Positions 41,490 to 55,650 of a stretch of 64,000 bases of DNA are shown here, one piece after another. The stretch spans positions 248,001 through 312,000 of IMG/VR virus record IMGVR_UViG_3300045970_000794; one strand, written 5' to 3'. The notes beneath the pieces were generated by a model. It had not been told where the DNA came from. It ran no database searches and saw nothing but the letters and a program-made list of their open reading frames with translations. A program made the translations under genes and the position numbers. Each line of letters opens with the position of its first letter. The stretch's first letter is position 1.

Positions 41490-41560
41490 ATTAATATGTT
41501 ACAAAGGTAATAAAAATAAAGTTACCAAACAAATTATTCAGTAACTTTATTTAATATATT
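41490..41560 (-). promoter_or_regulatory. Module P1 (with inverted repeat)
   Basis: -7 box TACCTTTG 41509-41502. Confidence 0.7.
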
Positions 41561-41563
41561 AAT

Positions 41564-41908
41564 TTAAGCAATCATTGATTTTCGTTTAACTAATCTACTT
41601 TCAACCACATCGAATGCTTTAGTTTTATGAACGTCTTCGCTAACTTCATCGATAGAAAGGATAGCAATTAAAGATTTTTTAACTAGAGGACTTTCAACCA
41701 CATCAAATGCTTTAGTACTTTGTTTATCGGCACTACATTCATCGATAGAAAGGATAGCCACATCGATATTGGTGCTGGGATTAATCGAAGGCAAAGCGGT
41801 ATCGTAGCTGAATGATACGAAAGTATCATCATTAGATGTTTGTACTTGTGCATTAGCACAGAAAGTTAGAGTAAATAAGCAAATTGCGAACATGATTAAG
41901 TTTTTCAT
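41564..41908 (-). CDS. Secreted protein with two 31-aa internal repeats
   Basis: Signal peptide; AILSIDE..TKAFDVVES twice (93-bp period, 41597-41758). Confidence 0.65.
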   Translation of the reverse strand: MKNLIMFAICLFTLTFCANAQVQTSNDDTFVSFSYDTALPSINPSTNIDVAILSIDECSADKQSTKAFDVVESPLVKKSLIAILSIDEVSEDVHKTKAFDVVESRLVKRKSMIA

Positions 41909-41920
41909 AATTTTAAAATT

Positions 41921-41988
41921 TTAGGTTAATAATATAATACAAAGGTAAATAAAATAAATGAGAAAAACAAATATTATTTAATATATTT
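41921..41988 (-). promoter_or_regulatory. Module P2
   Basis: -7 box 41947-41940. Confidence 0.8.
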
Positions 41989-42312
41989 TGCTAAATAATT
42001 ACGATAATTTTGTCTATATTTTTTATAGTATTGTTTTTTAATAATATTAAGATTATAACCAATGGATTCCAATTCATTTTTTAAATCATTATATTCGGTT
42101 TCAGTAGCTAATTTGGATATTGAAACGCAATGCAAATACATTGCTTCAGAGTGTTGTCCGTTATGCATATATGATAATATATTACCACGACTTGATTCTA
42201 TTTCATAAGGGAATAAAGCAATAATATCACCTTCTTTAAATTTTCTGAAAATTACATCAGTTTTATTAATATCTTTTTTAAACGGGAATAAAGTAATATT
42301 ATCTTTTTTCAT
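41974..42312 (-). CDS. Hypothetical phage protein
   Basis: VIFRKF..IIALFP..SY.H.GQHS; follows P3. Confidence 0.7.
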   Translation of the reverse strand: MKKDNITLFPFKKDINKTDVIFRKFKEGDIIALFPYEIESSRGNILSYMHNGQHSEAMYLHCVSISKLATETEYNDLKNELESIGYNLNIIKKQYYKKYRQNYRNYLAKYIK

Positions 42313-42324
42313 GGTGTTTTGGTT

Positions 42325-42394
42325 TTAGTATTGATTAATATAATGCAAAGGTAATATAAATAATTGAGAAAAACAAATATTATTTAATATATTT
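42325..42394 (-). promoter_or_regulatory. Module P3
   Basis: -7 box 42353-42346. Confidence 0.85.
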
Positions 42395-42589
42395 TTAAAT
42401 ATAATATTTATCAGCTGTAAATTGTTTATCAAAAACGACCATACTATTTGATTTTGAAGGGTATTTATTAACTAAATTAATAGCTTCATCACGTGTTAAG
42501 CCTCTTCTTATTATTTCACGTCTTCTTGAAACTCTGAACACTTTATATACTTTATAAGTTCCAATGTATTTTTTTTCAATTGTTTTCAT
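42395..42589 (-). CDS. Hypothetical protein
   Basis: 64 aa; follows P4. Confidence 0.65.
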   Translation of the reverse strand: MKTIEKKYIGTYKVYKVFRVSRRREIIRRGLTRDEAINLVNKYPSKSNSMVVFDKQFTADKYYI

Positions 42590-42600
42590 AGTGGTTTGTT

Positions 42601-42670
42601 TTAGTATTGATTAATATAAGACAAAGGTAATATAAATAATTGACAAAAACAAATATTATTTAATATATTT
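42601..42670 (-). promoter_or_regulatory. Module P4
   Basis: -7 box 42629-42622. Confidence 0.85.
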
Positions 42671-42730
42671 TTATTTTTATTTTATATTGCTTGGTATCAT
42701 TGTATTATAGAGAAAAGATGAAAATAAATT

Positions 42731-42800
42731 GAAAATAATTGCATTTTTATTTGGTAGATTAAAATAATTGTTGTAGATTTGCAATATCAAATTAATCAAT
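42731..42800 (+). promoter_or_regulatory. Module P5 (class B upstream element)
   Basis: -7 box TAGATTTG 42774-42781. Confidence 0.75.
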
Positions 42801-42822
42801 TTAACCACTAAAACATATTATT

Positions 42823-43395
42823 ATGAAAAACGTAGAAATTCAAATTATCGCTTCTGACAATGCAACTAGAGTTATTAACACTTTAAAAAATGCAGTTAGA
42901 AAATCACCTACAGGCGTTTCAATGATTAGCATTAGAAATTATACTAATAGTTACAATGAAATTAGTAACTCACGTATTAACATTGGTGCAAGTTACGAGA
43001 ATGCAAAACAAAAAGATATTAACTTTTTGAAAGCCCTTGACATCACTACATTAGAGAATAGAAAATCTGACGTTGTTACTTTAGAAATGGCAAGAATTGA
43101 ATTAATCAAATCTTTTGAAACACCCGATAAAAATCGTTCTAATGGTCAAATCGATGCTTATACTCATATTGTAAGCGGTTTAAAAGTACATAATGAAACT
43201 TCTAGGGTATATATTTATGGTTTGAGAGTAGCAAAGGAAGTTATTGTAAAAGGTGAATATCCAGTAGTGAATAGCAAACCACTTACTATTGCAAAAAATG
43301 AATTGAGAAAATTGTTAAAAACTAATGAATTTGTAAATTTTGCAATTGATATGACTGAAAGTATTCGTGCAAATGGTGAAGAGTTAACATTCTAA
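42823..43395 (+). CDS. Hypothetical protein
   Basis: 190 aa with own promoter and terminator. Confidence 0.75.
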   Translation: MKNVEIQIIASDNATRVINTLKNAVRKSPTGVSMISIRNYTNSYNEISNSRINIGASYENAKQKDINFLKALDITTLENRKSDVVTLEMARIELIKSFETPDKNRSNGQIDAYTHIVSGLKVHNETSRVYIYGLRVAKEVIVKGEYPVVNSKPLTIAKNELRKLLKTNEFVNFAIDMTESIRANGEELTF

Positions 43396-43412
43396 GCTAA
43401 TCAACTAAAATT

Positions 43413-43444
43413 AAAAGGGGTGAATTTATTCACTCCTTTTTTTT
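43413..43444 (+). terminator. Intrinsic terminator
   Basis: AAAAGGGGTGAA-TTTA-TTCACTCCTTTT plus T run. Confidence 0.8.
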
Positions 43445-43603
43445 GTTCTTATAAATTTAAGCTATTAATTAAATAGGTAATAATATAAATTAGGCTTCAT
43501 TAGATAAGCTATAAACGACTTTAATAATGTTTTAATATTTGGATATAGTTTGGATATTGGAGTGCCTTAAATCGCTTTAAAATGCTTAATGAAAATAATT
43601 ATA

Positions 43604-43669
43604 AAATATATTAAATAATATTTGGAATTATAGATTTTAATTTGTACCTTTGCATTATATTAACCAATA
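43604..43669 (+). promoter_or_regulatory. Module P6
   Basis: -7 box TACCTTTG 43645-43652. Confidence 0.85.
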
Positions 43670-43682
43670 AACCTTTTATATT

Positions 43683-43958
43683 ATGGAAACTACATTGAAT
43701 ATGAATGAACACAAATTTTATGTCTTAACTGATGATACTGGTAAAATAGTTGCTATCATTAGGACTGAAAGTATTCCACCATTTTGGAATAAGATTGAAC
43801 AAGCTATTAGAGAAGACCTTTGTTTAGAAAAGGATGTTAAAGTTAAATTAGTATCTAGTATTAGTCAGAATGAGAATACAACTATTTTCATTGATATTGA
43901 ATTTGGTGGTGGTATATGGGTTGGTAGTTATGAGTTAACGCAAACGGCGGTATATTAA
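43683..43958 (+). CDS. Hypothetical protein
   Basis: 91 aa with own promoter and terminator. Confidence 0.65.
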   Translation: METTLNMNEHKFYVLTDDTGKIVAIIRTESIPPFWNKIEQAIREDLCLEKDVKVKLVSSISQNENTTIFIDIEFGGGIWVGSYELTQTAVY

Positions 43959-43964
43959 ACAAAG

Positions 43965-43988
43965 AAACCCAGTAGAGATACTGGGTTT
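43965..43988 (+). terminator. Intrinsic terminator
   Basis: AAACCCAGTA-GAGA-TACTGGGTTT plus T run. Confidence 0.85.
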
Positions 43989-44028
43989 TTTTTTGGTATG
44001 ATACACAATTTAAAAGATACACAATTTA

Positions 44029-44042
44029 TACACAAATGTGTA
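44029..44042. promoter_or_regulatory. TACAC-N4-GTGTA palindrome 1
   Basis: TACACAAATGTGTA, preceded by two ATACACAATTT half-sites. Confidence 0.6.
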
Positions 44043-44099
44043 CTTTCTGAAAAATATTAGTATTTATTAGTAAATAATATATTATTAATATTTTAATTT

Positions 44100-44738
44100 A
44101 TGCCATATAAAGATAAAGATAAAGAAAAACAATACCAAAAGGAATACAGAGAAAAGAATAAAGAATATTTCGAAGAATATCGAAAAATACATAAATATAA
44201 AAATAATAAATCGTATCAGGAATATAGTGAAAATAATAAAGAATCGTCCAAAAAATATTATAAAACTAAGGATAAAATTGTATTACAAAAAAAAGAATAT
44301 TATGAAAATAATAAAGAAAAATTAAAGCAATCTCAAAAGGAATGGCGAGAAAATAATAAAGATTATACGAATAAAATTGCTCGTAATAAATATAAAACAG
44401 ACCCATTATTTAAACTTAAACGAAGTATAAGGCGTATAATTGCTTTCAGTCTTAAAAATAAAGGACTCAAAAAAACCAGTAGAGCACACCTTATTTTAGG
44501 CTGTTCTTTTAATGATTTTAAAACTCATATTGAATCGAAATTTGAATATTGGATGACTTGGGATAACTATGGTTTATATAACGGTACGTTAAATTATGGA
44601 TGGGATATTGACCACATTATACCATTAGCAACGGCAATAAATGAAGATGAAGTGATTAGATTAAATCATTATACTAATTTGCGACCATTATGTAGTCATA
44701 TTAATCGGGTAATAAAACGTAATAAAATTGTGTATTAG
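44100..44738 (+). CDS. HNH homing-endonuclease-like protein (paralog of 4761-5363)
   Basis: GLYNGT.NYGWDIDHII.LATA..E.....LNHYTNL.PLCS.IN shared with 4761. Confidence 0.75.
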   Translation: MPYKDKDKEKQYQKEYREKNKEYFEEYRKIHKYKNNKSYQEYSENNKESSKKYYKTKDKIVLQKKEYYENNKEKLKQSQKEWRENNKDYTNKIARNKYKTDPLFKLKRSIRRIIAFSLKNKGLKKTSRAHLILGCSFNDFKTHIESKFEYWMTWDNYGLYNGTLNYGWDIDHIIPLATAINEDEVIRLNHYTNLRPLCSHINRVIKRNKIVY

Positions 44739-44944
44739 GTATAGCGTTTACTAACTTCCTCCACGTATTTAATAACCATTTGAGAATGTTCTGTGGCTTT
44801 TTTCACGTAGTCGACATTAGGGTAATAGATTTTTCTATTAGGGTAGTTTTTCTTAACGAATTCAATAAGTTCCATAAGAACATCATTAGTATTATCGAGA
44901 GCGGTAAGAATGAGTTCACGTTCATCTATTTCTAATTGATTCAT
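44735..44944 (-). CDS. Hypothetical protein
   Basis: 69 aa; follows P7. Confidence 0.6.
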   Translation of the reverse strand: MNQLEIDERELILTALDNTNDVLMELIEFVKKNYPNRKIYYPNVDYVKKATEHSQMVIKYVEEVSKRYT

Positions 44945-44954
44945 AAGATTATTG

Positions 44955-45000
44955 GTTAAAGGTTAATGCAAAGATAAGGATAATATTTCTATTATCCAAA
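44955..45000 (-). promoter_or_regulatory. Module P7 with GAAA hairpin spacer
   Basis: TTTG-GATAATA GAAA TATTATCC-T-TATCTTTG. Confidence 0.75.
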
Positions 45001-45011
45001 TTTTTTTGCAT

Positions 45012-45404
45012 TTATTTTAATTGGTTATAAAAAATACCTTTTTCAGCATTTTCAAGGTCTTTACCAGTTGCTCCACGAAACCAAGCATCCCAATAAGTTC
45101 TTTGACAACTAGAATCCATTAAACGACCAATAATGATTTCTCTAATGTTTTCTTTATATGCTTGCATATCGCTTAATAAGTGGTCTGCAATGTCTTCATT
45201 TGATAACATAATATTTTTTACTGTAACATCTTTATTTAGTTTTAAAAATGTTTCCTCATACTTAGCTTTAGCTTCTTCTAATGTTTTAGCATCCACAATA
45301 CACCATTCTTCGGAGTTAAAAGAAGCTTCTTCAACTGTATTGTACTGTGTTAATGTTTCACACTTACAATCATCATCAATATCATATCCTAATATAAATT
45401 TCAT
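45012..45404 (-). CDS. Hypothetical protein
   Basis: ATG 45404 (MKFILG); the track start is a promoter TTG. Confidence 0.6.
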   Translation of the reverse strand: MKFILGYDIDDDCKCETLTQYNTVEEASFNSEEWCIVDAKTLEEAKAKYEETFLKLNKDVTVKNIMLSNEDIADHLLSDMQAYKENIREIIIGRLMDSSCQRTYWDAWFRGATGKDLENAEKGIFYNQLK

Positions 45405-45414
45405 AGCAGTAAGT

Positions 45415-45484
45415 TTTAATTGGTTAATACTTTGCAAAGATACTACAAATAATCCACATTACCAAATATTATTTAATATATTTT
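45415..45484 (-). promoter_or_regulatory. Module P8
   Basis: -7 box 45442-45435. Confidence 0.85.
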
Positions 45485-45500
45485 ATTCCAGTAAATGGGG

Positions 45501-45532
45501 AAAGGCTGTCCCCCACTACAAGGACAGCCCTT
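45501..45532 (-). terminator. Terminator hairpin
   Basis: GGCTGTCC..GGACAGCC stem. Confidence 0.7.
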
Positions 45533-45563
45533 TAACAAAATAATCAACCTTAAAAATAATCAC

Positions 45564-46109
45564 TTATTTAAATAAATCAAAAATAATTTCTTCTTTACAA
45601 TAACTTGGTACTTCAATTTCCAGACTTATCACATCCCTAGCCCATGTACCAATTAATTCAACATTACCTTTTTTTGCTTCGTGGTTAATATGATAATCAC
45701 CGCCGCCACGTCCGTTGCCTTCGCAAGTCATTAAAGGAAGTGGGTGTATAATCCAACCGTCAACATCAACACATTTTCTTTTATCAATGAATTGATTTTT
45801 GCTGTGGTTAACCAAGTAAGGGAATATTTCTCTTTTGATAACTGTATCAACTGGATTAACTTTTGTTTTATCAGCACATCTACCATATACATTGGATTTA
45901 AGACCTTTGCATTCATCAGCATAATCACCAGCCCAAACAACCCTTTGTGGCTTCTGCATTATTAAACTTTCGAATGCACCAACAAATCTGTTTAACAACC
46001 AAGAATGTTCCATAAGGTTAAGACCATTGTCATAGTCATGAGAATATATCCATGCTTTGACTGTTCTTTTATTGTCGCCTAAAATGGCGGGGTTATAATA
46101 CTGTCCCAT
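45564..46109 (-). CDS. Hypothetical phage protein
   Basis: ATG 46109 (MGQYY); LMEHSW, HPLPLMT..GNGRGGGD. Confidence 0.7.
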   Translation of the reverse strand: MGQYYNPAILGDNKRTVKAWIYSHDYDNGLNLMEHSWLLNRFVGAFESLIMQKPQRVVWAGDYADECKGLKSNVYGRCADKTKVNPVDTVIKREIFPYLVNHSKNQFIDKRKCVDVDGWIIHPLPLMTCEGNGRGGGDYHINHEAKKGNVELIGTWARDVISLEIEVPSYCKEEIIFDLFK

Positions 46110-46119
46110 AATATAAAGT

Positions 46120-46171
46120 TTTAATTGGTTAATATGATACAAAGGTAAGTAAAATATTTTAATAAACCAAA
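46120..46171 (-). promoter_or_regulatory. Module P9
   Basis: -7 box 46147-46140. Confidence 0.75.
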
Positions 46172-46551
46172 CTTTTTAACACTTTTCTTTCAATTACTTC
46201 ACTTTTTGCAAAGAAACATTGTTTACCCGATAAACTTGGAACATAGTCACTAACAACATACTCAACTAATACGAATCCATGTTTTAAGATTTCTCTATTA
46301 TACCCTTTAAACCATTTACGCAATTTATTAATGGTATCACAAGTGGAATAATATTTACTAATCATACCACGATGTGAGACTGGTAAATCTTCATATAATA
46401 TTGGGTGCCCATCTGATTTCCAACTATGTTCACGACAAACCTTACGTTGAAAATCCAATACCTCCTCAACATTATTGAATGGTTTCTCATCTGCTCTATA
46501 AAAACCATCCTCATCGAATGGGCTTTCATAACGATATATAGTCATTTCCAT
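46159..46551 (-). CDS. Hypothetical protein
   Basis: 130 aa; carries the leader motif but no promoter. Confidence 0.65.
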   Translation of the reverse strand: MEMTIYRYESPFDEDGFYRADEKPFNNVEEVLDFQRKVCREHSWKSDGHPILYEDLPVSHRGMISKYYSTCDTINKLRKWFKGYNREILKHGFVLVEYVVSDYVPSLSGKQCFFAKSEVIERKVLKSLVY

Positions 46552-46584
46552 AATACGATTGGTTTAATTGATTAATACTAACAC

Positions 46585-47175
46585 TTATTTGTTATAAAAC
46601 GTTGTGTATGCTTTATAGCTTTTTGAAATTGTATTATGATAATCGTCTTCATTTTTTAAACTTAAAGCAGTTATTAAAACATTCAGAATTTGAACGAGTG
46701 AATATAATTTTAAATTTTCTTGGTTATTACAATCAATATAATTGGTTTTATTATTATAATAATAACCGTATGCGCTTGTCCTTGTAAGTTTATTAAATAC
46801 TTCATAAAATCTAATTAACAATTCATTTTCATTATAAAGTTCTTTAAACTCTGTTGCTAACTTGTTTTTTATATCATTAGTCCAATTATCAACAATCAAT
46901 GAGTAAATAACGCCAAAAAAATAGTTTGGATGTTCCCTTAATCCCATATCCCAACATCTTTGTATAAAATCTGAATGTGTGAAACCTCCAAAAGTATTTT
47001 TATTTCCAATTGTCATTGTTGGAATGAGTAAAAACCCATAATTTCGTTTATCCCTTTTAATACGATTATTTTCATCTAATAAGAATTTTGCTTCATTAAC
47101 ATTTGCAAATAACACCCAAAAAGGATTTGGGCTAAATGATTTACATAATAATAAACCGCTTTCAATATTTTCCAT
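46585..47175 (-). CDS. Hypothetical protein
   Basis: 196 aa; follows P10. Confidence 0.6.
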   Translation of the reverse strand: MENIESGLLLCKSFSPNPFWVLFANVNEAKFLLDENNRIKRDKRNYGFLLIPTMTIGNKNTFGGFTHSDFIQRCWDMGLREHPNYFFGVIYSLIVDNWTNDIKNKLATEFKELYNENELLIRFYEVFNKLTRTSAYGYYYNNKTNYIDCNNQENLKLYSLVQILNVLITALSLKNEDDYHNTISKSYKAYTTFYNK

Positions 47176-47186
47176 GATTTTTGGTT

Positions 47187-47275
47187 TTAGTATTGATTAA
47201 TATAATGCAAAGGTAATAAAAAAAAGTTGCTATCCAAATTTTTTAGCAACTTTTTTCATATTATTTAATATATTT
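47187..47275 (-). promoter_or_regulatory. Module P10 (13-bp inverted repeat over the -33 box)
   Basis: -7 box 47215-47208; arms 47220-47232 and 47244-47256. Confidence 0.8.
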
Positions 47276-47792
47276 TACCAACTTGAACCATATTCACAAT
47301 AGCTAGAAATACCATTTATCTCATCAGCTTTCAATTCTCTAATGATAGGTGCTAACATTTTAACGGTATCTTTAAGGTCACCAAAATAGCTTTCATCATA
47401 TTGAGTACCACCAAAAAAGAAACCACTTTGACTTGGCAATAATCTTTCAGCTACCTTTGGGCTTTTTGATTTAACAACTCTTCTACAAAGTTCAATCAAT
47501 GTTTCTAATTGATTTAAACTAACTTCATAATCGCCACAATCGTCATTACCCTCTTGAACGTTCTGAACAAACCAAGCATGAATTTGATTAGATTTGCACC
47601 AGTAAGCAACGTTTTCAGTGATTTCAGTTACTCGTTTGAATTTGATGTTAATTTGATGTTAATTTTGACTTTCTTTTCACCTTCATTTTCGATGTAAACT
47701 TTTCTTGAAATGTCAATAACACCTTTAACCTTATTGTGTTCGTATTGAGCACCAATGTAGGTTTTTTTACTTAAATACATATCTAGTCCCAT
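47275..47792 (-). pseudogene. MGLDMYL-type phage gene frameshifted by an 11-bp tandem duplication
   Basis: TTTGATGTTAA x2 at 47641-47662; removing one copy gives a 168-aa ORF with YWCKSNQIHAWFV. Confidence 0.8.
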
Positions 47793-47803
47793 AATATAAA
47801 GTT

Positions 47804-47874
47804 TTAGTATTGATTAATATAATGCAAAGATACAAAATATAATTCAAATAAACAAATATTATTTAATATATTTT
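47804..47874 (-). promoter_or_regulatory. Module P11
   Basis: -7 box 47832-47825. Confidence 0.85.
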
Positions 47875-47886
47875 TAATTATTTTAC

Positions 47887-48082
47887 ATAAATAATGGGTT
47901 AGGTAACCACACCTAACCCAAATAATCAATTAATCAATATACTAAACACACTATGAAGACGTACTCAGTTTCTTTAAATAGTTAGTAGCTACCTCCGAAT
48001 TCAACCCTTAGTAAATCTATTAAGTACAAGTCAGTAGAAAGTTATGTACTTCGAGGGTAATTGCTATCTAACTATAATTTCT
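47887..48082 (-). ncRNA. Candidate structured small RNA (about 195 nt)
   Basis: Own promoter P12, no ATG, long bulged stem (48068-75 with 47978-85; 48050-66 with 47986-99), terminator 47895-47920. Confidence 0.55.
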
Positions 48083-48087
48083 TTTTG

Positions 48088-48119
48088 CAAAGATACAACA
48101 AATAATTTACTTTACCAAA
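48088..48119 (-). promoter_or_regulatory. Module P12 (core only)
   Basis: TTTG 48119-16, N20, TATCTTTG 48095-88. Confidence 0.7.
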
Positions 48120-48514
48120 TATAATTGCAACGATTTATTAATTTCTTTTAAATAAGCTTCTGCTTCTGTTTTATTATATAAAGCATATCTATCCATTTGC
48201 TTACCATTATAAGGTTTTAATGTAACAACATCAATTACTTTGCCATCTCTATTAACAAAATAATAATAAGTTGAGCAAGCTGGCATTCCACTTGCTAATG
48301 ATTTACCCCTAGATGGAATGTATTGATTTGATTTCAATTCAAACTGTGGCGGTATTGCTGCTAAATAAAATACTACTTTTGATACATCAGATTTACATAC
48401 TACAGTTCTGAATTTTCTACCTGTGATTTTAACATCCTCTTTAGTGAAATTACTCTTTTCATAAGTGATTCCTTTTCTTGTAAATTTCTCGGGTAATACT
48501 GTAAATGTTTTCAT
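48107..48514 (-). CDS. Hypothetical protein
   Basis: ATG 48514 (MKTFTV). Confidence 0.65.
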   Translation of the reverse strand: MKTFTVLPEKFTRKGITYEKSNFTKEDVKITGRKFRTVVCKSDVSKVVFYLAAIPPQFELKSNQYIPSRGKSLASGMPACSTYYYFVNRDGKVIDVVTLKPYNGKQMDRYALYNKTEAEAYLKEINKSLQLYLVK

Positions 48515-48523
48515 GGTATAAAG

Positions 48524-48594
48524 GTTTAATTGATTAATATAATGCAAAGATACAATAAATAATTTAATCTACCAAATATTATTTAATATATTTT
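48524..48594 (-). promoter_or_regulatory. Module P13
   Basis: -7 box 48552-48545. Confidence 0.85.
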
Positions 48595-48622
48595 TAATAT
48601 ATTTTTAATTATTTTTCAAAAT

Positions 48623-48653
48623 AAAAGGGTTAGTCTACGGAACCAACCCTTTT
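48623..48653 (-). terminator. Terminator hairpin
   Basis: AAAAGGGTT..AACCCTTTT. Confidence 0.65.
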
Positions 48654-48690
48654 AACTCGACACCTGCCGCCAACTGAGTAATTAAATTAC

Positions 48691-49062
48691 TCAATATTTT
48701 GAATCCTTAACAGCCTTTTGAATTAGCTTAATAGCTTCAATACACTGCTCGGGAGTAATAGCCTTATACTTTTTATTACATTTGATATGATTGTAAATTT
48801 TTTCAGCTTCACAACCACTTGGTAAATTGGTATTCCAATCCTTTTCTTTTGCAAATCCAACTCCAATTCGTGTGAATTTTGGAAAGCCAACAATAGCTTG
48901 GTCTTTATGTAACTTCACTCTGAAAACCCAATAGTTTTCATCGATTGGTGGGGTTATCATTATAACTCCACGGTTGCCATTACTGAAAATTGAACTCACA
49001 TCACCTTTGAAATATTCATTGAATTCAACTACTAACTTAGGTACTTCTGTTTTTGTTTCCAT
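48691..49062 (-). CDS. Hypothetical phage protein
   Basis: 123 aa; TPPIDENYW..GFPKF..DWNTNLP. Confidence 0.7.
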   Translation of the reverse strand: METKTEVPKLVVEFNEYFKGDVSSIFSNGNRGVIMITPPIDENYWVFRVKLHKDQAIVGFPKFTRIGVGFAKEKDWNTNLPSGCEAEKIYNHIKCNKKYKAITPEQCIEAIKLIQKAVKDSKY

Positions 49063-49073
49063 GATAAATAGTT

Positions 49074-49142
49074 TTTATTGATTAATATAATGCAAAGATA
49101 AGTAAAATATTTTAACCCACCAAATAAAAATGCAATTATTTT
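49074..49142 (-). promoter_or_regulatory. Module P14 (class B)
   Basis: -7 box 49100-49093. Confidence 0.85.
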
Positions 49143-49480
49143 TACATTGTTGAAATTATTTCCTCAAGTATAGCAATCCTTTTTTTAGTATAGAATATAT
49201 TATGTGGGAACCAATTAAGGTTTTTATCCCTTTTACGTTTCGGACAATATTTGTCTAACTCTATATAAACGTTTTCATCCTCATAAAAGCTAAAAACTTT
49301 AGATTTAGCATCCCATGTATCTATATTCAATATTTCACAAGCACGACTAATAGCAAGACATATACCATTATAGTAAATAGGGTACCCTTTTTGAATTTTA
49401 TTATCTTCAACACGTTCTTTAATAAACTTTAACGCCTCTTGATAAATCTTTTTCCTTAATTTAGTTGTATTTCTTGGCAT
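49142..49480 (-). CDS. Hypothetical protein, paralog of 60826-61185
   Basis: LRK.IY..L....G.C..I..IEL..Y.P..WFP..KRI.ILE. Confidence 0.65.
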   Translation of the reverse strand: MPRNTTKLRKKIYQEALKFIKERVEDNKIQKGYPIYYNGICLAISRACEILNIDTWDAKSKVFSFYEDENVYIELDKYCPKRKRDKNLNWFPHNIFYTKKRIAILEEIISTM

Positions 49481-49492
49481 GATATAAAAGGT

Positions 49493-49579
49493 TTATTGAT
49501 TAATACTTTGCAAAGATAATAAAAAGATAGTTACTAACCTAATTTTTTAGTAACTATTTTTCATATTATTTAATATATT
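49493..49579 (-). promoter_or_regulatory. Module P15 (11-bp inverted repeat)
   Basis: -7 box 49518-49511; arms 49527-37 and 49547-57. Confidence 0.8.
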
Positions 49580-49886
49580 ACCAAACACTTCCAAATAAGT
49601 TTTTGTTAATATCAACTTTAGTCTTACACCAGTCAATTATTGTTTCAGCATAATAACTTGTTGTTAAGTCACTAAGGAACATATACAATTCTCTATATGT
49701 ATTACCAGTACCAACTGTTACAACCCTACGTGTAAACTCTTCAGCTTTACTTTGGTCACTGGAACTCCTTGTACCTTTTGAATAGTCCCATTCTTTTCCA
49801 ATAACAGTAATTGCTTTTTTTGTTGTTTCTACAGTGATAATGCCACCTTTAGCATATTCACCAATTTTCCAAGTCTTTGTTGCCAT
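49578..49886 (-). CDS. Hypothetical protein
   Basis: ATG 49886 (MATKTWK). Confidence 0.65.
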   Translation of the reverse strand: MATKTWKIGEYAKGGIITVETTKKAITVIGKEWDYSKGTRSSSDQSKAEEFTRRVVTVGTGNTYRELYMFLSDLTTSYYAETIIDWCKTKVDINKNLFGSVW

Positions 49887-49895
49887 AATATAATA

Positions 49896-49966
49896 GTTTA
49901 ATTGATTAATATGATGCAAAGATAAAACAAATAAATGAGAAAACCTAATATTATTTAATATATTTT
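49896..49966 (-). promoter_or_regulatory. Module P16
   Basis: -7 box 49924-49917. Confidence 0.85.
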
Positions 49967-49980
49967 TATGCGCACACATG

Positions 49981-49994
49981 TACACCTTTGTGTA
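49981..49994. promoter_or_regulatory. TACAC-N4-GTGTA palindrome 2
   Basis: GTACACCTTTGTGTAC. Confidence 0.6.
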
Positions 49995-50185
49995 CGTGAT
50001 TGTTAGCTTTTAATAATAGCCAAATAAAAATAAATACATCCCTACAACCAACGATAATAGAGCGGTAAATAATATACTGCATTTAACAACCAAACAACTT
50101 GGTTAATCGGGTGGAAGTGGTATAACTAATGTCCCTAATGAAAAAACAATTGCTAATACTAATAGAAATAATATAAGTCCCATGA

Positions 50186-50554
50186 TTAAAGAATATTAGT
50201 TGAAATAAAAATTGCGGCTGGTTTAACATCTAAATAGATTACTAATCCATTACCACGTTTAATACCATACTTAGCATATGGCATATTAACAACACGCACC
50301 AATGGCTTTCTTACACCACTTGCTCTCCAAATGGCTTCGAGGTCTTCTTGAGAAAGAACATGGAATGTATTTCTACCTTCGGTTCTGAATATAGGTTTAC
50401 CCCTTTCAGCATCTTTAATTATCCTTAATTCAATTGATAACTTATTTGCTTTATTAGCATTAGATTTCCATTTAAAAGAATCCACTGTTAACTTTTCCCT
50501 TTTCTTATCGAGTGCCTTTATTTCAGCAGTCAATTCATCAATGTTCTTTTTCAT
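50186..50554 (-). CDS. Hypothetical protein
   Basis: ATG 50554 (MKKNIDE). Confidence 0.6.
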   Translation of the reverse strand: MKKNIDELTAEIKALDKKREKLTVDSFKWKSNANKANKLSIELRIIKDAERGKPIFRTEGRNTFHVLSQEDLEAIWRASGVRKPLVRVVNMPYAKYGIKRGNGLVIYLDVKPAAIFISTNIL

Positions 50555-50558
50555 ACCT

Positions 50559-50732
50559 TTATGTTGTTTTAAAATTACCACACGATTTACATCCATTTTT
50601 ACGACCATCACCTGGTGCATATAAACACCCTCGACATTCATACCAATCAATCACTCTAGGATTTTTTTTAGGTTTGATTTTAATACCCTTTATATTTGCT
50701 ACAATGCTTGGTTTAATTATAATACCTTCCAT
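50559..50732 (-). CDS. 57-aa Cys-rich protein (not in ORF track)
   Basis: MEGIIIKP..WYECRGC..GCKSCGN; fills the gap between neighbours. Confidence 0.5.
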   Translation of the reverse strand: MEGIIIKPSIVANIKGIKIKPKKNPRVIDWYECRGCLYAPGDGRKNGCKSCGNFKTT

Positions 50733-50737
50733 GATTT

Positions 50738-51205
50738 CTATTTTTTAAGTAATTGAATATAACCAACCCAATATTCCATAACATCAAATTTTTCGCTTGG
50801 TTCTGTATCATCGTCAGTATCATTACACAAATCTTGAAAATCATTTAATGAGTATACATCAACTATACAATTAAATGCACTATGAACATCTTTTAATGTA
50901 TTGAACTTTTCATTTGCATATGTTTCAACAATCTTACGACCACTACGATTATCTCTAATTGGAACTAAAGCAATATGTGTTTCATATACCTTTTCTTTTT
51001 CATCAATGGTAATACCATGTCTATTAAGAAAAGTAGTCCATTGATGATATAATAAAGGGTGACAAGCTGTAGCCCCAACAAATTTACCGTCTTTAAGACG
51101 AATTTCACCCATTGAATCCCCAACTTTGAATCCAGTTCCTTCTAACTCGACATCACCTTTTTCAGCGAAGGCAACTATTTTTGTTTTGGTTGTTTTGAAT
51201 TTCAT
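50738..51205 (-). CDS. Hypothetical protein
   Basis: 155 aa; follows P17. Confidence 0.65.
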   Translation of the reverse strand: MKFKTTKTKIVAFAEKGDVELEGTGFKVGDSMGEIRLKDGKFVGATACHPLLYHQWTTFLNRHGITIDEKEKVYETHIALVPIRDNRSGRKIVETYANEKFNTLKDVHSAFNCIVDVYSLNDFQDLCNDTDDDTEPSEKFDVMEYWVGYIQLLKK

Positions 51206-51214
51206 AACAATTTA

Positions 51215-51285
51215 GTTTAATTGGTTAATAATACTACAAAGATAATAAATTAAATTGACATTACCAAATATTATTTAATATATTT
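51215..51285 (-). promoter_or_regulatory. Module P17
   Basis: -7 box 51244-51237. Confidence 0.85.
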
Positions 51286-51291
51286 TAATTA

Positions 51292-51489
51292 TTATTTTAA
51301 TTCTTTTACATCCTTTGATATCACTACATATTCTTTAAGAAGCTCCTCATATAATGCCTCATCTTGCTCATGCAGCTTATTAAATAATACGCCAATGTTG
51401 CTATCTTTGGGGGTTAATGATTTATTTTTAATTGCTCCCATTTTACCCCGAATAAGGAATTCCAGTTTTTTAAGGTCTTTACTACTCAT
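51292..51489 (-). CDS. Hypothetical protein
   Basis: 65 aa ORF. Confidence 0.6.
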   Translation of the reverse strand: MSSKDLKKLEFLIRGKMGAIKNKSLTPKDSNIGVLFNKLHEQDEALYEELLKEYVVISKDVKELK

Positions 51490-51501
51490 CGCTAATAATA
51501 T

Positions 51502-52107
51502 TTAAACGTTATCAATTTTCTTTAACTCATTATCAATGTAATCATATACCTCCTTGGCAATGTCACCTGTAACTTCTGAATAAACGCCAGTTCTGAACCG
51601 CTCTTCTGTAGCATTAACATGAACCTCAAGCTTTTTTCCATTATAATCCACATCGTAAATCTCAATCTTAGTGGTAAGAGTCATTGAACTATTTTTAGCT
51701 TTCTTTTCTTTTACCCTAGCCAAGACATCCATAACACCTCGCTTTGCGATATAATTAACATCCATTACCGTGAAACCATTAGCATACATTAAAATGATTT
51801 CTGATATTGGAACGGAGGTTACAATTAATTTATCTGGATTTCTCCAATCTGAACCCATTATTAACGTTTGTCCATCATCCTCTGGATTAGGAATCAAATT
51901 CACATATTGGAAATTGTATGTTACTGTGTCACCACTCATGTCGTCATCAATCTGAACATCAAATAACGGCTCATCATTCATATCGTTAACCGTGTCCCAA
52001 TCCGAAAAACTTTCGAACTCTATAACTTGAACAGGTAAGTTGGTACCCACTACTAAATATTGTTTCTCCTTAACATTTAGGTATACTTTATCAATTGTTG
52101 CATCCAT
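51502..52107 (-). CDS. Hypothetical protein
   Basis: 201 aa; follows P18. Confidence 0.6.
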   Translation of the reverse strand: MDATIDKVYLNVKEKQYLVVGTNLPVQVIEFESFSDWDTVNDMNDEPLFDVQIDDDMSGDTVTYNFQYVNLIPNPEDDGQTLIMGSDWRNPDKLIVTSVPISEIILMYANGFTVMDVNYIAKRGVMDVLARVKEKKAKNSSMTLTTKIEIYDVDYNGKKLEVHVNATEERFRTGVYSEVTGDIAKEVYDYIDNELKKIDNV

Positions 52108-52119
52108 GGTTTATATTGT

Positions 52120-52183
52120 TTTAAATGATTAATTACAAAGGTATGTAAAATAATTCTTATTACCAAATCTTATTTAATATATT
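52120..52183 (-). promoter_or_regulatory. Module P18
   Basis: -7 box 52143-52136. Confidence 0.75.
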
Positions 52184-52519
52184 ATCAGTTTTTTCCACGG
52201 GCTTCTTTATGCTATTCAACTCAATTCTTTTTGGTTCAATTGTTACCTTTACATATTCACCAATAATTAATGTATTCTGGTTTTTAACATATGCATTAAC
52301 ACCATTACGAATATATTTTTCGGCACTATCCAATTGAACTACATTGGTACAACTGTCCACAACCTTTTTAATCCGTAAGGAATAACGCTTGAGGAATTCA
52401 TCCAATTCAATTTTATACTTCGCTTGTCTGACCTCAGAATCAAAACTATTAAATGTATCGCTAATTGTTTTAATTACACTATCAAACGTATCATTCGCTT
52501 TATTAAGAAGACTTTCCAT
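52160..52519 (-). CDS. Hypothetical protein
   Basis: 119 aa; follows P19. Confidence 0.65.
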   Translation of the reverse strand: MESLLNKANDTFDSVIKTISDTFNSFDSEVRQAKYKIELDEFLKRYSLRIKKVVDSCTNVVQLDSAEKYIRNGVNAYVKNQNTLIIGEYVKVTIEPKRIELNSIKKPVEKTDNILNKIW

Positions 52520-52531
52520 AGTGTAAAAAAG

Positions 52532-52601
52532 GTTAATTGGTTAATATGATGCAAAGATAAAACAAATAAATGACAATTCCAAATATTATTTGATATATTT
52601 T
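52532..52601 (-). promoter_or_regulatory. Module P19
   Basis: -7 box 52559-52552. Confidence 0.85.
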
Positions 52602-52714
52602 TTATAATGTGAAAATTATTAAATTTCCCTAGGGGACAAAACTCTTACATCCCTTGATAACCCATTATATACATTTTATCTATATCCTTCTGAAAGCCCA
52701 TATGAAAATAAATT

Positions 52715-52765
52715 GAAAATAATTCACTTTTTATTTGGTAGTTTAATTTATTTTTTGTACCTTTG
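52715..52765 (+). promoter_or_regulatory. Module P20 (class B)
   Basis: -7 box TACCTTTG 52758-52765. Confidence 0.8.
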
Positions 52766-52918
52766 TTCTGTCATTATAAGACATGTTGGTACCACCACAG
52801 TACCAAGAGGTATACTCCAACCTACACCATATTTTTTTTACCATATATTTAGATATATACATAACCTACATACGTATCAATAACAAAAAGGGAATGAGTA
52901 TTACACCCACCCCCTTAA
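52766..52918 (+). ncRNA. Candidate small RNA, copy A
   Basis: TGTCATTA..AGAC.TG and AGGTATACTCCAAC shared with 54922-54976; TTGGTAC-N7-GTACCAA hairpin. Confidence 0.4.
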
Positions 52919-52940
52919 AGAAAATAATATTAACTAAAAA

Positions 52941-53921
52941 CTATCTTAATACATAATCATTTTGACCTGTAACTTCTAATGCAAAATTAAATGATTGCAT
53001 ATTAGTTCTATAATTAGTACCAACACTTAAACTTTCAAGTTGACCATTCTCACGTTTTGGGTGTGATTTAGCATGATTAGTCCAACTAGTTACCCCATTG
53101 TGTAATCCAAAAATTGTATTACCTTTTTGGTTCATTTCTTTTTTAATGTGGGAATATAATGTGTCCATTGCATTTAAAGTTTTACCACTATCAACACCAA
53201 CCTTAGCAGTCAATCTATCAACACCTAATAATTCTCTTACTAAACCATCAACTAAATTTTGTGTACAGGCTGTTGAGTGGAATTTATTATAAATCTCAAT
53301 TTGTTTCATACTTTCGTTTAATGCTAAACGAATTAAACTTGGTAACTCAACCATTTTACCCTCTAACGACGCACTATGTTTTAACTTCATTTCACCCCTT
53401 TTATAAAAACGAAAAAATTGATTTGAACAGCTCATTACCATATCTGAAATTCCTACACCTAATCCAGTGCTACCATCATTAGAATCAATAATGGTAATGT
53501 ACTTTTTAATGCTATCATTACCAACTTTTGAAAATCCATCAATAGCTAACTGAATAAACGTTTTACGCCCACCATTCAAACAACCAGCTTTGCTTACATT
53601 TAACTCACCAAAACCATTCATACCACGTAACACCAATTCAACAACATCATCATTTTGGCTCACATGATAACTAGCTTTGGTAGTGTTAATGATTTCCATA
53701 CTTTGAGTATTTAATAACCCAAAATATGTGGTGCGAATTGATTTCTGTTTTTTAGCTTTACCAAATAAGCCAACCATTGGAACTTTCTCAATACGAAAAT
53801 TTAAACCATTGTCAACCAAGATTTTTTTCACTTGATTTTTAAGTGCTCTTTCTTGCTTTTTAGCATTATTAGTTTTTTGTGCCATAGCTTCTTTTTCAAA
53901 ATTTACGATTTCTGTTTTCAT
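52941..53921 (-). CDS. DUF932-family protein
   Basis: AGCLNGGRKTFIQL, DSNDGS..G..MVMSCSNQF, KHSAS; ATG 53921. Confidence 0.75.
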   Translation of the reverse strand: MKTEIVNFEKEAMAQKTNNAKKQERALKNQVKKILVDNGLNFRIEKVPMVGLFGKAKKQKSIRTTYFGLLNTQSMEIINTTKASYHVSQNDDVVELVLRGMNGFGELNVSKAGCLNGGRKTFIQLAIDGFSKVGNDSIKKYITIIDSNDGSTGLGVGISDMVMSCSNQFFRFYKRGEMKLKHSASLEGKMVELPSLIRLALNESMKQIEIYNKFHSTACTQNLVDGLVRELLGVDRLTAKVGVDSGKTLNAMDTLYSHIKKEMNQKGNTIFGLHNGVTSWTNHAKSHPKRENGQLESLSVGTNYRTNMQSFNFALEVTGQNDYVLR

Positions 53922-53930
53922 GATATATAG

Positions 53931-54000
53931 TTTTAATTGATTAATATAATGCAAAGGTAAGTAAAATATTTTAATCTACCAAATATTATTTAATATATTT
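53931..54000 (-). promoter_or_regulatory. Module P21
   Basis: -7 box 53959-53952. Confidence 0.85.
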
Positions 54001-54013
54001 TCAAATTATTTTA

Positions 54014-54676
54014 CTAATGTTGTACGAAACACACGTTATTCTTAGTTATACAGTAAGTACACTCCAAACCACATTTAATGTTTTTACTACTTGTAACAGG
54101 GCAAATAAATGATTTATGATTTGCTTTTAACTCATTGCAATACTCAATACTACCAAAATTCAATTTACCATTGATGAAACTACTTATTAAATTGAAATTG
54201 CTATTAGTCTTAATAACACTAAAATCTAATAAACTTTCTACCTTGGTATATACATAAAATTTAATATGTGGAAATAAACCAATAATATCATTCCAAAAAT
54301 CAATATATGATTGACTGAAAAAGTCACCACTAGAATGAATCCTTACCACAGTCCTTTTTGTTTCACTTAATTGTGTTACAATTAATTCCTTTAATAAACT
54401 TGGATTGTTTAAAAACAATTCATGATTAACAGTACGATACAATTCAGTATCTACATATTGAACCTCAGCCTTTTTTGCATAGCAACTTGCTTTGCAGTCC
54501 ACACAATTTAAACAAGTTTTTACACTTGGTAAATCAAAGATAAGAATATTATGTAACTTGCTATTACCATTAACTAATCTATTCTTATTAATATAGATGT
54601 AATTAAATAGTAATTCACGAGTATTGGTTTGTTTGCTGTAATCTCTGAATGTCCTAGATAAATCAAAATTGTTCAT
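54014..54676 (-). CDS. GP88-like (phage Gene 88) Cys-cluster protein
   Basis: FDLPSVKTC..C..C..CYAKK, VRIHSSGDF, FYVYTK, C..C..C; ATG 54676. Confidence 0.6.
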   Translation of the reverse strand: MNNFDLSRTFRDYSKQTNTRELLFNYIYINKNRLVNGNSKLHNILIFDLPSVKTCLNCVDCKASCYAKKAEVQYVDTELYRTVNHELFLNNPSLLKELIVTQLSETKRTVVRIHSSGDFFSQSYIDFWNDIIGLFPHIKFYVYTKVESLLDFSVIKTNSNFNLISSFINGKLNFGSIEYCNELKANHKSFICPVTSSKNIKCGLECTYCITKNNVCFVQH

Positions 54677-54689
54677 AGTGTTTCGGTTT

Positions 54690-54759
54690 AAGTGATTAAT
54701 AACATATTGCAAAACTACAAAAAATATTTCATATAAACAAATATTATTTAATATATTTT
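54690..54759 (-). promoter_or_regulatory. Module P22
   Basis: -7 box TAGTTTTG 54717-54710. Confidence 0.75.
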
Positions 54760-54870
54760 TCATATACTATATAAGATATTAATTGTTGGCTCAAACCCTC
54801 TGAAACCCCTATGGCAACTCAAAAACATTCTTATTCCGTGAATAAGAATGATAGCAAATTAAAATATTTT

Positions 54871-54921
54871 GAAAATAATTCACTTTTTATTTGGTAGATT
54901 AAATTATTTTCACTACCTTTG
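54871..54921 (+). promoter_or_regulatory. Module P23 (class B)
   Basis: -7 box TACCTTTG 54914-54921. Confidence 0.8.
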
Positions 54922-55020
54922 TATTGTCATTAAGACGTGACGATACCCACAACGGTCTCGGAAGGTATACTCCAACATGCAATGTTGTCGGTGGAACACT
55001 CCAATATGCCCGCTATTTTC
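54922..55020 (+). ncRNA. Candidate small RNA, copy B (3' end uncertain)
   Basis: Shares motifs with copy A; CAACAT-GCA-ATGTTG hairpin. Confidence 0.4.
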
Positions 55021-55278
55021 CTATGGGGAAATATTTGGAATTGTAAATTATTATTTGTAAGTTTGCATATGATTTAAATGGGACTGCGGTCCCACTGAAT
55101 TTGCTCGCTCATTAAATAAATGGGTTAGCCTTGCCATTCCTATTACTGAATATATCAGCGATACGGATTCCTATACCCATTTTTTTGCGAATTTGGGCAT
55201 CGGCATAGCTATTTCCAAAAATTTCTGGCGAAAAATATTAACAAAAATTTTTGCACAAGTCCGATTCCTATTAGAATA

Positions 55279-55314
55279 TACTATGGAATCTACTGTGGAA
55301 TATACTATGGAATA
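55279..55314. repeat. 12-bp tandem repeat x3
   Basis: TACTATGGAATC TACTGTGGAATA TACTATGGAATA. Confidence 0.85.
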
Positions 55315-55640: not shown

Positions 55641-55650
55641 TTAGAGGGGC

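What the first reader, a model, noticed from the sequence alone, without database searches (positions are those of the whole stretch)
47887..48095. Promoter- and terminator-bounded structured RNA with no ORF
Seen: promoter P12 drives about 195 nt with no ATG. AUAGUUAG pairs with CUAACUAU, a bulged stem continues inward, AAGUACA/UGUACUU can form an inner hairpin, and a 10-bp terminator stem ends the unit. I cannot assign it to a known family. Inference: a new phage sRNA, possibly a protein sponge or anti-defence RNA.
Basis: partly seen in the sequence, partly recalled or inferred. Interest (0 to 1): 0.65.

Follow-up and report, generated by a model that had tools for sequence, protein, structure and literature searches.

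The report
Orphan small RNA unit in jumbo phage
A 362-kb T4-like phage that probably infects Bacteroidota carries a roughly 194-nt unit on the minus strand with a host-type promoter, an intrinsic terminator and no reading frame, so it is probably a small non-coding RNA gene, but it has no detectable relatives or expression data and its function is unknown.

Summary
The promoter is a Bacteroidota sigma-A type: TTTG, a 20-nt spacer, then TATCTTTG (TAnnTTTG). Its 13-mer core is identical to the promoters of neighbouring genes. The predicted start is near 48081. It leads into a 98-nt closed domain (pairing probability about 1.0 in the outer stem and its inward continuation, about 0.75 in the inner hairpin), a 57-nt AU-rich linker, and a hairpin of 9-11 pairs with a U-rich tail (47920->47895). 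No ORF exists, even with TAG read through.

The fold is only modestly unusual (z -2.7; top 2-3 % of genome windows), and inverted repeats of this size are common here.

No homologue was found in Rfam, GenBank phages, the phage's own genome, 28 other virus records (27 portal relatives), 78 loci holding homologues of the downstream gene, 151 Bacteroidia genomes, or 18-mer scans of metagenome and genome contigs. The only other copy is identical.

Best reading: an independently transcribed sRNA gene sitting in a gene slot and doubling as the 3'UTR of the upstream gene. Its function is unshown. The main rival is a transcribed but functionless empty slot. The sponge or anti-defence idea has no support.

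The parts
48116..48119 (-). -33 element TTTG of the promoter; it lies inside the last codons of the upstream ORF, whose stop TAA at 48109->48107 falls in the spacer
   Evidence: Sequence. The 20-nt spacing to the -7 box matches other promoters of this genome. The same overlap of a promoter with the 3' end of the homologous gene is seen in L002.
48086..48098 (-). Promoter core TTGTATCTTTGCA, containing the -7 box TATCTTTG (48095->48088) of Bacteroidota type TAnnTTTG
   Evidence: An exact 13-mer shared with the promoters of the genes starting at 47792, 48514 and near 28501. 21 matches against 4.6 expected. TAnnTTTG is named as the Bacteroidetes promoter motif in PMC10309648.
47978..48075 (-). 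98-nt closed structured domain. The outer stem (8 bp) continues inward past a one-base bulge as a 4-bp stem, then 4 and 3 further pairs. It is capped by a junction holding the 7-bp hairpin (48051->48022, 16-nt loop) and a weak second hairpin.
   Evidence: MFE and centroid folds. Pairing probabilities in the full transcript are 0.77-1.0 for the outer stem, about 1.0 for its inward 4-bp continuation and 0.53-0.78 for the hairpin. GC is 34 % against 27 % for non-ORF DNA.
47921..47977 (-). AU-rich linker (25 % GC), mostly single-stranded or weakly paired; the candidate interaction region
   Evidence: Fold. It holds 2.5 copies of an 8-nt repeat. The top-10 mean duplex energy against translation-start regions is lower than in all 25 shuffles, but the minimum energy is not exceptional and the genomic-segment null is not exceeded.
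47885..47920 (-). Intrinsic terminator: hairpin 47920->47895 (9 G+C-rich pairs, 11 counted by the scan, 4-6 nt loop) followed by UUAUUUAUGU
   Evidence: Terminator scan. Pairing probability is about 1.0. The hairpin is followed directly by the terminator-promoter module of the next gene, which recurs between genes of this block.
47793..47884 (-). Complete promoter and 5'UTR module of the downstream gene (-7 box within 47835->47823, ATG at 47792). It separates the RNA unit from that gene.
   Evidence: the UTR profile hits 47821->47784.

Best explanation
This is an independent small non-coding RNA gene of a T4-like jumbo phage whose host is probably a member of Bacteroidota.

Supported by motif matches (not by direct assay): host RNA polymerase with sigma-A would recognise a -33 TTTG / -7 TATCTTTG promoter that overlaps the 3' end of the upstream ORF. 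It would start near 48081, transcribe about 194 nt of the minus strand and stop at the hairpin 47920->47895.

Inferred: because no terminator lies between the upstream ORF and this unit, the same sequence is also the 3'UTR of that mRNA. This is the layout of 3'UTR-embedded sRNAs that have their own promoter.

Predicted by folding only: the RNA has a 98-nt closed multi-stem 5' domain, a 57-nt AU-rich linker that is largely unpaired, and the terminator hairpin.

The mechanism I commit to is inference, not shown. It acts in trans as a riboregulator. The AU-rich linker would pair with A/U-rich translation-start regions of phage or host mRNAs, and the 5' domain would give stability or a protein handle.
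For: - Promoter: an exact 13-mer shared with three gene promoters in the window. The region from -33 to -7 is nearly identical to the promoter of the neighbouring gene.
- The motif family precedes ATG within 40 nt at 67 of 77 sites, and it also precedes tRNA genes.
- In L002, a promoter overlaps the 3' end of a 45 %-identical homologue of the upstream gene with the same 20-nt spacing. There it drives a small protein gene.
- Terminator: the strongest in the block.
- No ORF of 25 aa or more lies within the unit. All three minus-strand frames are closed by TAA or TGA even when TAG is read as Q. That test was justified by a CUA-anticodon tRNA in the genome.
- Blastx against the genome's own ORFs finds no paralogue remnant.
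- Fold z is -2.7, with high pairing probabilities and core GC above intergenic DNA.
- A second assembly from another sample carries it unchanged.
Against: - There is no expression evidence.
- There is no homologue anywhere, so no covariation or conservation test is possible.
- The fold is not an outlier. About 2-3 % of genome windows fold as well, and comparable inverted repeats are common.
- The adjacent downstream gene is split by an 11-nt tandem duplication, so this neighbourhood tolerates decay.
- The proposed pairing to start regions is not significant against real genomic segments. A profile of the shared 5'UTR does not match the antisense of the RNA.
Confidence: 0.5

Rival explanations
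1. It is an empty or decayed gene slot. The block consists of small genes separated by recombining terminator-promoter-UTR modules. Here a promoter was left driving about 190 nt of functionless spacer. That spacer happens to contain an inverted repeat and ends at the terminator of the next module. An RNA is made, but it is not under selection.
For: - The modular repeats between genes, and the fact that the terminator belongs to such a module.
- The same promoter position drives a protein gene in L002.
- The downstream neighbour is frameshifted by an 11-nt duplication in both assemblies.
- The fold is only in the top 2-3 % of windows and inverted repeats are common.
- There are no relatives at all.
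Against: - No trace remains of the standard 5'UTR cassette, a start codon or a coding remnant. Blastx against the genome's own ORFs finds nothing. The UTR profile is silent on this locus on both strands.
- GC of the core is above intergenic level.
- A 12-bp outer stem with pairing probability of about 1.0 closes exactly the segment that begins 6 nt after the predicted start.
Confidence: 0.3
2. It is a cis-acting element rather than a trans-acting sRNA. It could be a structured 3'UTR that stabilises the upstream mRNA. It could instead be a promoter-proximal leader whose terminator is read through under control (attenuator or riboswitch, a lambda pR'-tR' style unit, or a put-like processive antitermination RNA), feeding the downstream early genes.
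For: - No terminator separates the upstream ORF from the unit, so it is part of that mRNA.
- The order is promoter, 98-nt structured domain, terminator, then genes.
- The 3' arm of the outer stem and the 3' arm of the terminator share CUAAC, so GUUAG in the terminator's 5' arm could pair with either one.
Against: - A complete promoter and 5'UTR module lies between the terminator and the next gene.
- The alternative pairing is only 5 bp, against an 11-bp terminator.
- No riboswitch or leader family matches in Rfam, even at E up to 10.
- The RNA is not linked to the downstream gene family in 78 other phage loci.
Confidence: 0.13
3. It is a T4-type R-loop replication origin: a promoter whose short non-coding transcript stays hybridised to an easily unwound downstream region and primes DNA synthesis. 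This rests on my own knowledge of T4 oriF and oriG.
For: - The phage has a T4-type portal and large terminase.
- The unit is a promoter driving a non-coding transcript, with an AT-rich segment (25 % GC) downstream.
Against: - The first 98 nt are not AT-rich and are predicted to fold on themselves.
- A strong terminator bounds the unit.
- The cumulative GC skew shows no turn here.
- The promoter is an ordinary member of the gene-promoter family.
Confidence: 0.04
4. It is a hidden tiny protein gene, using a non-canonical start or a recoded stop.
For: The genome encodes a CUA-anticodon tRNA, so TAG could be read through.
Against: - There is no ATG on the transcribed strand.
- All three frames carry TAA or TGA stops even with TAG=Q.
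- The only ORF of 25 aa or more on that strand (47929->47804, TTG start) begins downstream of the structured domain and runs through the terminator into the next gene's promoter and 5'UTR module.
Confidence: 0.02

Closest known systems
3'UTR-embedded sRNAs with their own ORF-internal promoter (enterobacterial DapZ, MicL; from my own knowledge)
   Same: The promoter overlaps the end of the upstream ORF. The RNA shares its terminator with the upstream mRNA. It has no ORF. It has a structured part followed by a single-stranded stretch and an intrinsic terminator.
   Different: Those are chromosomal, Hfq-dependent and conserved, with known seeds and targets. This one is in a phage of a probable Bacteroidota host (a phylum without Hfq, from my own knowledge), is about 194 nt long, and has no relatives and no known target.
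Phage-encoded small RNAs found by 5'-end transcriptomics, e.g. in phiKZ (PMC8244752) and other Pseudomonas phages (PMC10914365); the papers were listed but not read in depth
   Same: Short non-coding units bounded by a promoter and a terminator in lytic and jumbo phage genomes, mostly of unknown function.
   Different: Those have experimental 5' ends. This one has none. There is no sequence similarity to any GenBank phage.
Bacteroidota chromosomal sRNAs (e.g. GibS, MasB of Bacteroides thetaiotaomicron; from my own knowledge)
   Same: A -33/-7 sigma-A promoter, an intrinsic terminator, and stem-loops with an exposed pairing region.
   Different: There is no Rfam match. The covariance model found no match in 154 Bacteroidota genomes: 151 sampled Bacteroidia plus three MAGs.
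Lambda 6S RNA (pR'-tR' leader, 194 nt) and HK022 put RNA (from my own knowledge)
   Same: A short terminated transcript next to a phage promoter, and a structured RNA directly after the start site.
   Different: Those control read-through into genes that lack their own promoters. Here every downstream gene has its own promoter module.
Type III toxin-antitoxin antitoxin RNAs (ToxI-like)
   Same: The order promoter, non-coding RNA, terminator, then a gene of about 170 aa.
   Different: There are no tandem repeats of 34-45 nt. The downstream gene has its own promoter. It matches only phrog_7971 of unknown function and no significant Pfam family. No similar RNA lies beside 78 homologues of that gene.

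Membership tests
Any Rfam 15 family | Covariance-model score at or above the family's gathering threshold | tested here: not met
   No match in the whole window at gathering thresholds. In 47600-48300 at E up to 10 there are only two chance-level hits (mir-1246 at 15 bits, cow-rumen-3 at 11 bits), far below their thresholds.
tRNA / tmRNA | Cloverleaf or tmRNA architecture detectable by ARAGORN | tested here: not met
   No tRNA or tmRNA genes in the window, although the same program finds 40 tRNA genes elsewhere in the genome.
Independent bacterial/phage sRNA gene (generic kind) | Own promoter of the type used by the host polymerase | tested here: met
   TTTG, 20 nt, then TATCTTTG. The 13-mer core is identical to neighbouring gene promoters. 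The motif type is named in PMC10309648. This is a motif match only; activity was not measured.
Independent bacterial/phage sRNA gene (generic kind) | Intrinsic terminator at the 3' end and no translatable ORF | tested here: met
   Terminator scan. ORF lists and read-through translations.
Independent bacterial/phage sRNA gene (generic kind) | A discrete stable transcript detected | not testable with these tools
   No RNA run holds the sequence.
Conserved structured RNA family | Homologues with compensatory base changes in the proposed helices | tested here: inconclusive
   No homologue was found in any collection searched. The only other copy is 100 % identical. The model was built from a single sequence, so its sensitivity is limited.
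Riboswitch / transcription attenuator | It sits in the 5' leader of the regulated gene with no promoter in between, and has a mutually exclusive antiterminator of comparable strength | tested here: not met
   A full promoter and 5'UTR module lies between the terminator and the gene. The alternative pairing is only 5 bp (sequence).
Type III antitoxin RNA | Tandem direct repeats of about 34-45 nt upstream of a ToxN/AbiQ-type toxin gene | tested here: not met
   No such repeats. The downstream protein fragments have no significant Pfam family; they match only phrog_7971 of unknown function.
Bacterial Y RNA (YrlA-like) | Encoded next to, or together with, an Rsr/Ro (TROVE) protein; a long terminal stem plus a tRNA-like module | tested here: not met
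   No TROVE domain in the 362-kb genome, while the control genomes gave matches. No Rfam Y RNA match. Only the long terminal stem is present.
T4-type R-loop origin | Promoter plus a downstream DNA-unwinding element, with origin activity | not testable with these tools
   Only composition could be examined. The core is 34 % GC and the linker 25 %. The GC skew shows no turn.

The most novel reading that the evidence does not exclude
This RNA is the first recognised member of a set of early-expressed structured non-coding RNAs in T4-like jumbo phages of Bacteroidota. This genome and its 353-kb relative both carry several promoter-driven units without an ORF. The RNA would act either as a decoy for a host RNA-binding or defence protein, or as a global repressor that pairs with the A/U-rich start regions of the phage's own early-gene cassettes.
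Probability: 0.1. Interest if true: 0.7.

Novelty: new member of a known kind. Interest (0 to 1): 0.35.

Why it matters
RNA biology is almost unexplored in phages of Bacteroidota, and non-coding RNAs of jumbo phages are generally known only from a few Pseudomonas models. If the unit is real, it shows that such phages use host-type -33/-7 promoters to make dedicated small RNAs alongside their early-type small genes. This genome and a 353-kb relative both appear to hold several more promoter-driven non-coding units. Together they could be a useful entry point for studying how these phages take over a host that lacks Hfq and Shine-Dalgarno-led translation. As it stands, it is a single orphan sequence without expression or conservation evidence, so its value is as a well-delimited candidate for an experiment.

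Tried and rejected
1. Plus-strand reading. No Bacteroidota-type promoter faces that way near the locus. The plus strand has ATGs and no terminator tail. Rejected.

2. TAG-recoded small ORF. Tested because the genome has a CUA-anticodon tRNA. All frames are still closed. Rejected.

3. Pseudogene of one of the genome's own paralogues. Blastx against all stop-to-stop ORFs of the genome finds only the locus itself. Rejected.

4. The linker as an inverted copy of the shared early-gene 5'UTR plus start codon (an "anti-UTR" RNA).
- By eye there is an 11-nt match and an MKT... start.
- Smith-Waterman scores are matched by 35 % of random genome segments.
- A profile HMM of 15 UTR cassettes finds the true cassettes but not this locus, even at E up to 100.
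- Duplex energies to 585 start regions beat dinucleotide shuffles only for the top-10 mean.
- Kept only as a weak lead.

5. Homologue hunts, all empty:
- GenBank phages, blastn.
- Own genome, blastn and nhmmer; only the promoter recurs.
- Five related records, blastn.
- Single-sequence covariance model R1 against 29 virus records (the phage's own record plus 28 others, 27 of them portal relatives). The one hit, E 0.025 in G005, lies antisense inside a 469-aa ORF.
- 78 loci with homologues of the downstream gene.
- G001 at 240-340 kb with filters off; best 17.8 bits.
- 151 sampled Bacteroidia genomes and three Bacteroidota MAGs.
- Exact-pattern scans of viral contigs.
- 18-mer scans of metagenome contigs and genome contigs. 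The hits are near the chance number and sit in unrelated contexts, the genome-contig ones plausibly coding.

6. Synteny. Relatives of the upstream gene in L002 and G002 are followed by a protein gene or by a terminator, not by this RNA. The 196-aa neighbour has no relatives.

7. Y RNA. No Rsr/TROVE in the genome.

8. Type III antitoxin. No repeats.

No reads were laid, so population variation and depth are unknown.

Full report
**Where the finding sits.** The window is bases 248001-312000 of a 362,102-bp IMG/VR virus record with direct terminal repeats. GC is about 30 %. The record encodes a T4-type portal and large terminase and a ClpB-like AAA+ protein, so it is a T4-like jumbo phage. The sequence occurs in pond metagenomes.

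The finding lies in a 314-bp gap between two minus-strand ORFs, 48107..48547 and 47628..47792. These belong to a long block of small minus-strand genes.

- The 13-mer TTGTATCTTTGCA (48098->48086) recurs 21 times in the window with up to 2 mismatches, against 4.6 expected. The intergenic matches lie shortly upstream of a gene and in its orientation; a few 2-mismatch matches fall inside ORFs.
- It contains TATCTTTG, an instance of the Bacteroidetes -7 box TAnnTTTG (the motif is named in PMC10309648).
- It is preceded at 20 nt by TTTG. That is the -33/-7 architecture of sigma-A promoters in that phylum (the architecture is from my own knowledge).
- Genome-wide, 77 sites fit a stricter form of the motif. 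Of these, 67 have an ATG within 40 nt, and others precede tRNA genes.
- The stretch from -33 to -7 of this promoter is almost identical to that of the neighbouring gene's promoter.
- The -33 box lies in the last codons of the upstream ORF.
- A 45 %-identical homologue of that ORF in another phage contig (L002) carries a promoter at the same place with the same spacing. There it drives a 67-aa protein gene.

I therefore regard the promoter as real and the host as a member of Bacteroidota. Both conclusions are inferences from motifs.

**Anatomy of the unit.** The predicted start is near 48081, six nucleotides before the outer stem.

- The outer stem AUAGUUAG/CUAACUAU continues past a one-base bulge as UAGC/GCUA, then UACC/GGUA and UCG/CGG. 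Together these close a 98-nt domain (48075->47978).
- The apex of that domain holds the 7-bp hairpin AAGUACA/UGUACUU with a 16-nt loop, and a weak second hairpin.
- In the full-length model the outer stems pair with probability of about 1.0, and the hairpin with about 0.75.
- A 57-nt AU-rich linker follows.
- The unit ends at the hairpin 47920->47895 with the tail UUAUUUAU. This is the best terminator-like site of the block.
- Immediately after it begins the terminator-promoter-5'UTR module of the next gene. This module type is repeated between many genes here.

The unit therefore occupies what is otherwise a gene slot. Because no terminator lies between the upstream ORF and the unit, it is also that mRNA's 3'UTR.

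**Coding potential.** No ORF of 25 aa or more lies within the unit. The genome carries a CUA-anticodon tRNA, so I also read TAG through. All three frames remain closed by TAA or TGA. Blastx against all ORFs of the phage shows no paralogue remnant.

**How unusual the fold is.** It is only moderately unusual.

- z is -2.7 on the minus strand and -3.5 on the plus strand, against dinucleotide shuffles.
- After GC correction the core is in the top 2-3 % of 106-nt windows of the genome.
- Inverted repeats of 12 nt or more within 150 nt are frequent, about 150 in the window.
- The core's GC (34 %) is somewhat above non-ORF DNA (27 %).

**Known families.** Rfam 15 gives nothing at gathering thresholds in the whole window, and nothing credible at E up to 10. 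ARAGORN finds nothing. There are no tandem repeats of the type III antitoxin kind. The genome has no TROVE/Rsr protein that would suggest a Y RNA.

**Relatives.** The only other copy, in a 15.9-kb contig from a JGI sample, is identical over 341 nt. All other searches were empty:

- blastn against GenBank phages;
- blastn and nhmmer against the phage's own genome;
- blastn against five related records;
- a covariance model built from the single sequence, run against the phage's own record plus 28 other virus records, 27 of them portal relatives. The one weak hit is antisense inside an ORF;
- the same model against 78 loci carrying homologues of the downstream gene;
- the same model against 100 kb of the closest complete relative with filters off;
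- the same model against 151 sampled Bacteroidia genomes and three Bacteroidota MAGs;
- exact-word scans of viral, metagenome and genome contigs, whose hits are at chance level.

The flanking genes are themselves poorly conserved.

**Expression.** This was the other refutation criterion, and it cannot be judged either. Only DNA runs hold the sequence.

**Mechanism.** The best-supported reading is an independently transcribed small RNA. It has a 5' structured domain, an exposed AU-rich stretch and an intrinsic terminator. It is laid out like 3'UTR-embedded sRNAs that have their own promoter.

I tested one concrete mechanism: that the linker is antisense to the shared 5'UTR and start codon of the early-gene cassettes. 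The resemblance seen by eye does not survive a genomic-segment null or a profile search. Only a shuffle-based test gives a weak signal. Trans-acting base pairing therefore remains an inference from architecture, not a result.

The main rival is a functionless transcribed spacer in an empty gene slot. The modular and recombining nature of the block favours it. So does the fact that the adjacent downstream gene is frameshifted by an 11-nt tandem duplication in both assemblies.

Cis-acting readings (attenuator, antitermination leader, stabilising 3'UTR) are weakened by the complete promoter module between the terminator and the next gene. The possible antiterminator is also only 5 bp.

A T4-style R-loop origin and a hidden micro-ORF are unlikely.

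**Verdict.** This is a well-delimited, plausible, orphan sRNA gene candidate. If real, it is a new member of a known kind (phage-encoded small RNAs), and it belongs to no described family.

Noticed in passing
window 54764-55650: About 890 bp with no ORF of 50 aa or more, 34 % GC, inside the minus-strand gene block. It carries two PLUS-strand Bacteroidota-type promoters (-7 boxes near 54917-54926 and 55058-55067), each followed by G+C-rich non-coding sequence. There is no Rfam match at E up to 1. This may hold one or two further non-coding RNAs.
   Followed up: partly
window 47275-47792 (minus strand): The gene downstream of the finding is split into a 54-aa frame and a 127-aa frame by 2.5 copies of an 11-nt tandem repeat (AATTTGATGTT, 47639-47665). 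The same split is called in the second assembly. Its family (phrog_7971, unknown function) is widespread, with 78 viral loci at 34-58 % identity.
   Followed up: partly
window about 41500-54800: The small genes are separated by near-identical modules. Each has an optional terminator hairpin, an A/T-rich stretch ending in TTTGG, a spacer of about 19-20 nt, the -7 box, a shared 28-31-nt 5'UTR containing ATTAA(T/C)CAAT, and then ATG. A profile of the UTR finds about 20 copies.
   Followed up: partly
G000 genome 24,310-77,051 (outside the window): There are about 40 tRNA genes, including one with a CUA anticodon at 71,732-71,807 that sits directly behind a promoter of the same family. This hints at amber suppression or TAG recoding in part of the genome.
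   Followed up: partly
window 13087-13134: A perfect 48-bp palindrome (26-nt arms that overlap) in the gap between two minus-strand genes. The 106-nt window that contains it folds best in the whole genome (-44 kcal/mol).
   Followed up: no
G001 (353-kb relative; loci L196-L213), e.g. G001 142,554; 213,047; 260,222; 273,328; 275,261; 298,821: The closest complete relative also has many promoter-like sites followed by G+C-rich sequence with no ORF. One of them begins like a tmRNA (GGGGATGACTTTGGATTCGAC). None resembles the RNA studied here.
   Followed up: partly
G000 genome about 77,932 (minus strand, outside the window): A promoter of the same family is followed by more than 300 nt with no ATG-started ORF, upstream of a tRNA cluster. 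There is no Rfam family other than tRNA in 60-80 kb.
   Followed up: partly
L002 3280-3350 and window 48086-48119: A promoter overlaps the last codons of the upstream gene (TTTG in the codons for ...L-V-K, with the stop codon in the spacer). It is found at the same place in a 45 %-identical homologue in an unrelated phage contig, where it drives a small membrane-protein gene.
   Followed up: yes
window 14085-16607, 20638-22095, 32066-33595: The phage encodes a full-length ClpB-like double-AAA+ chaperone, a leucine-rich-repeat protein, and a protein that combines a periplasmic-binding domain with an OmpA domain.
   Followed up: no
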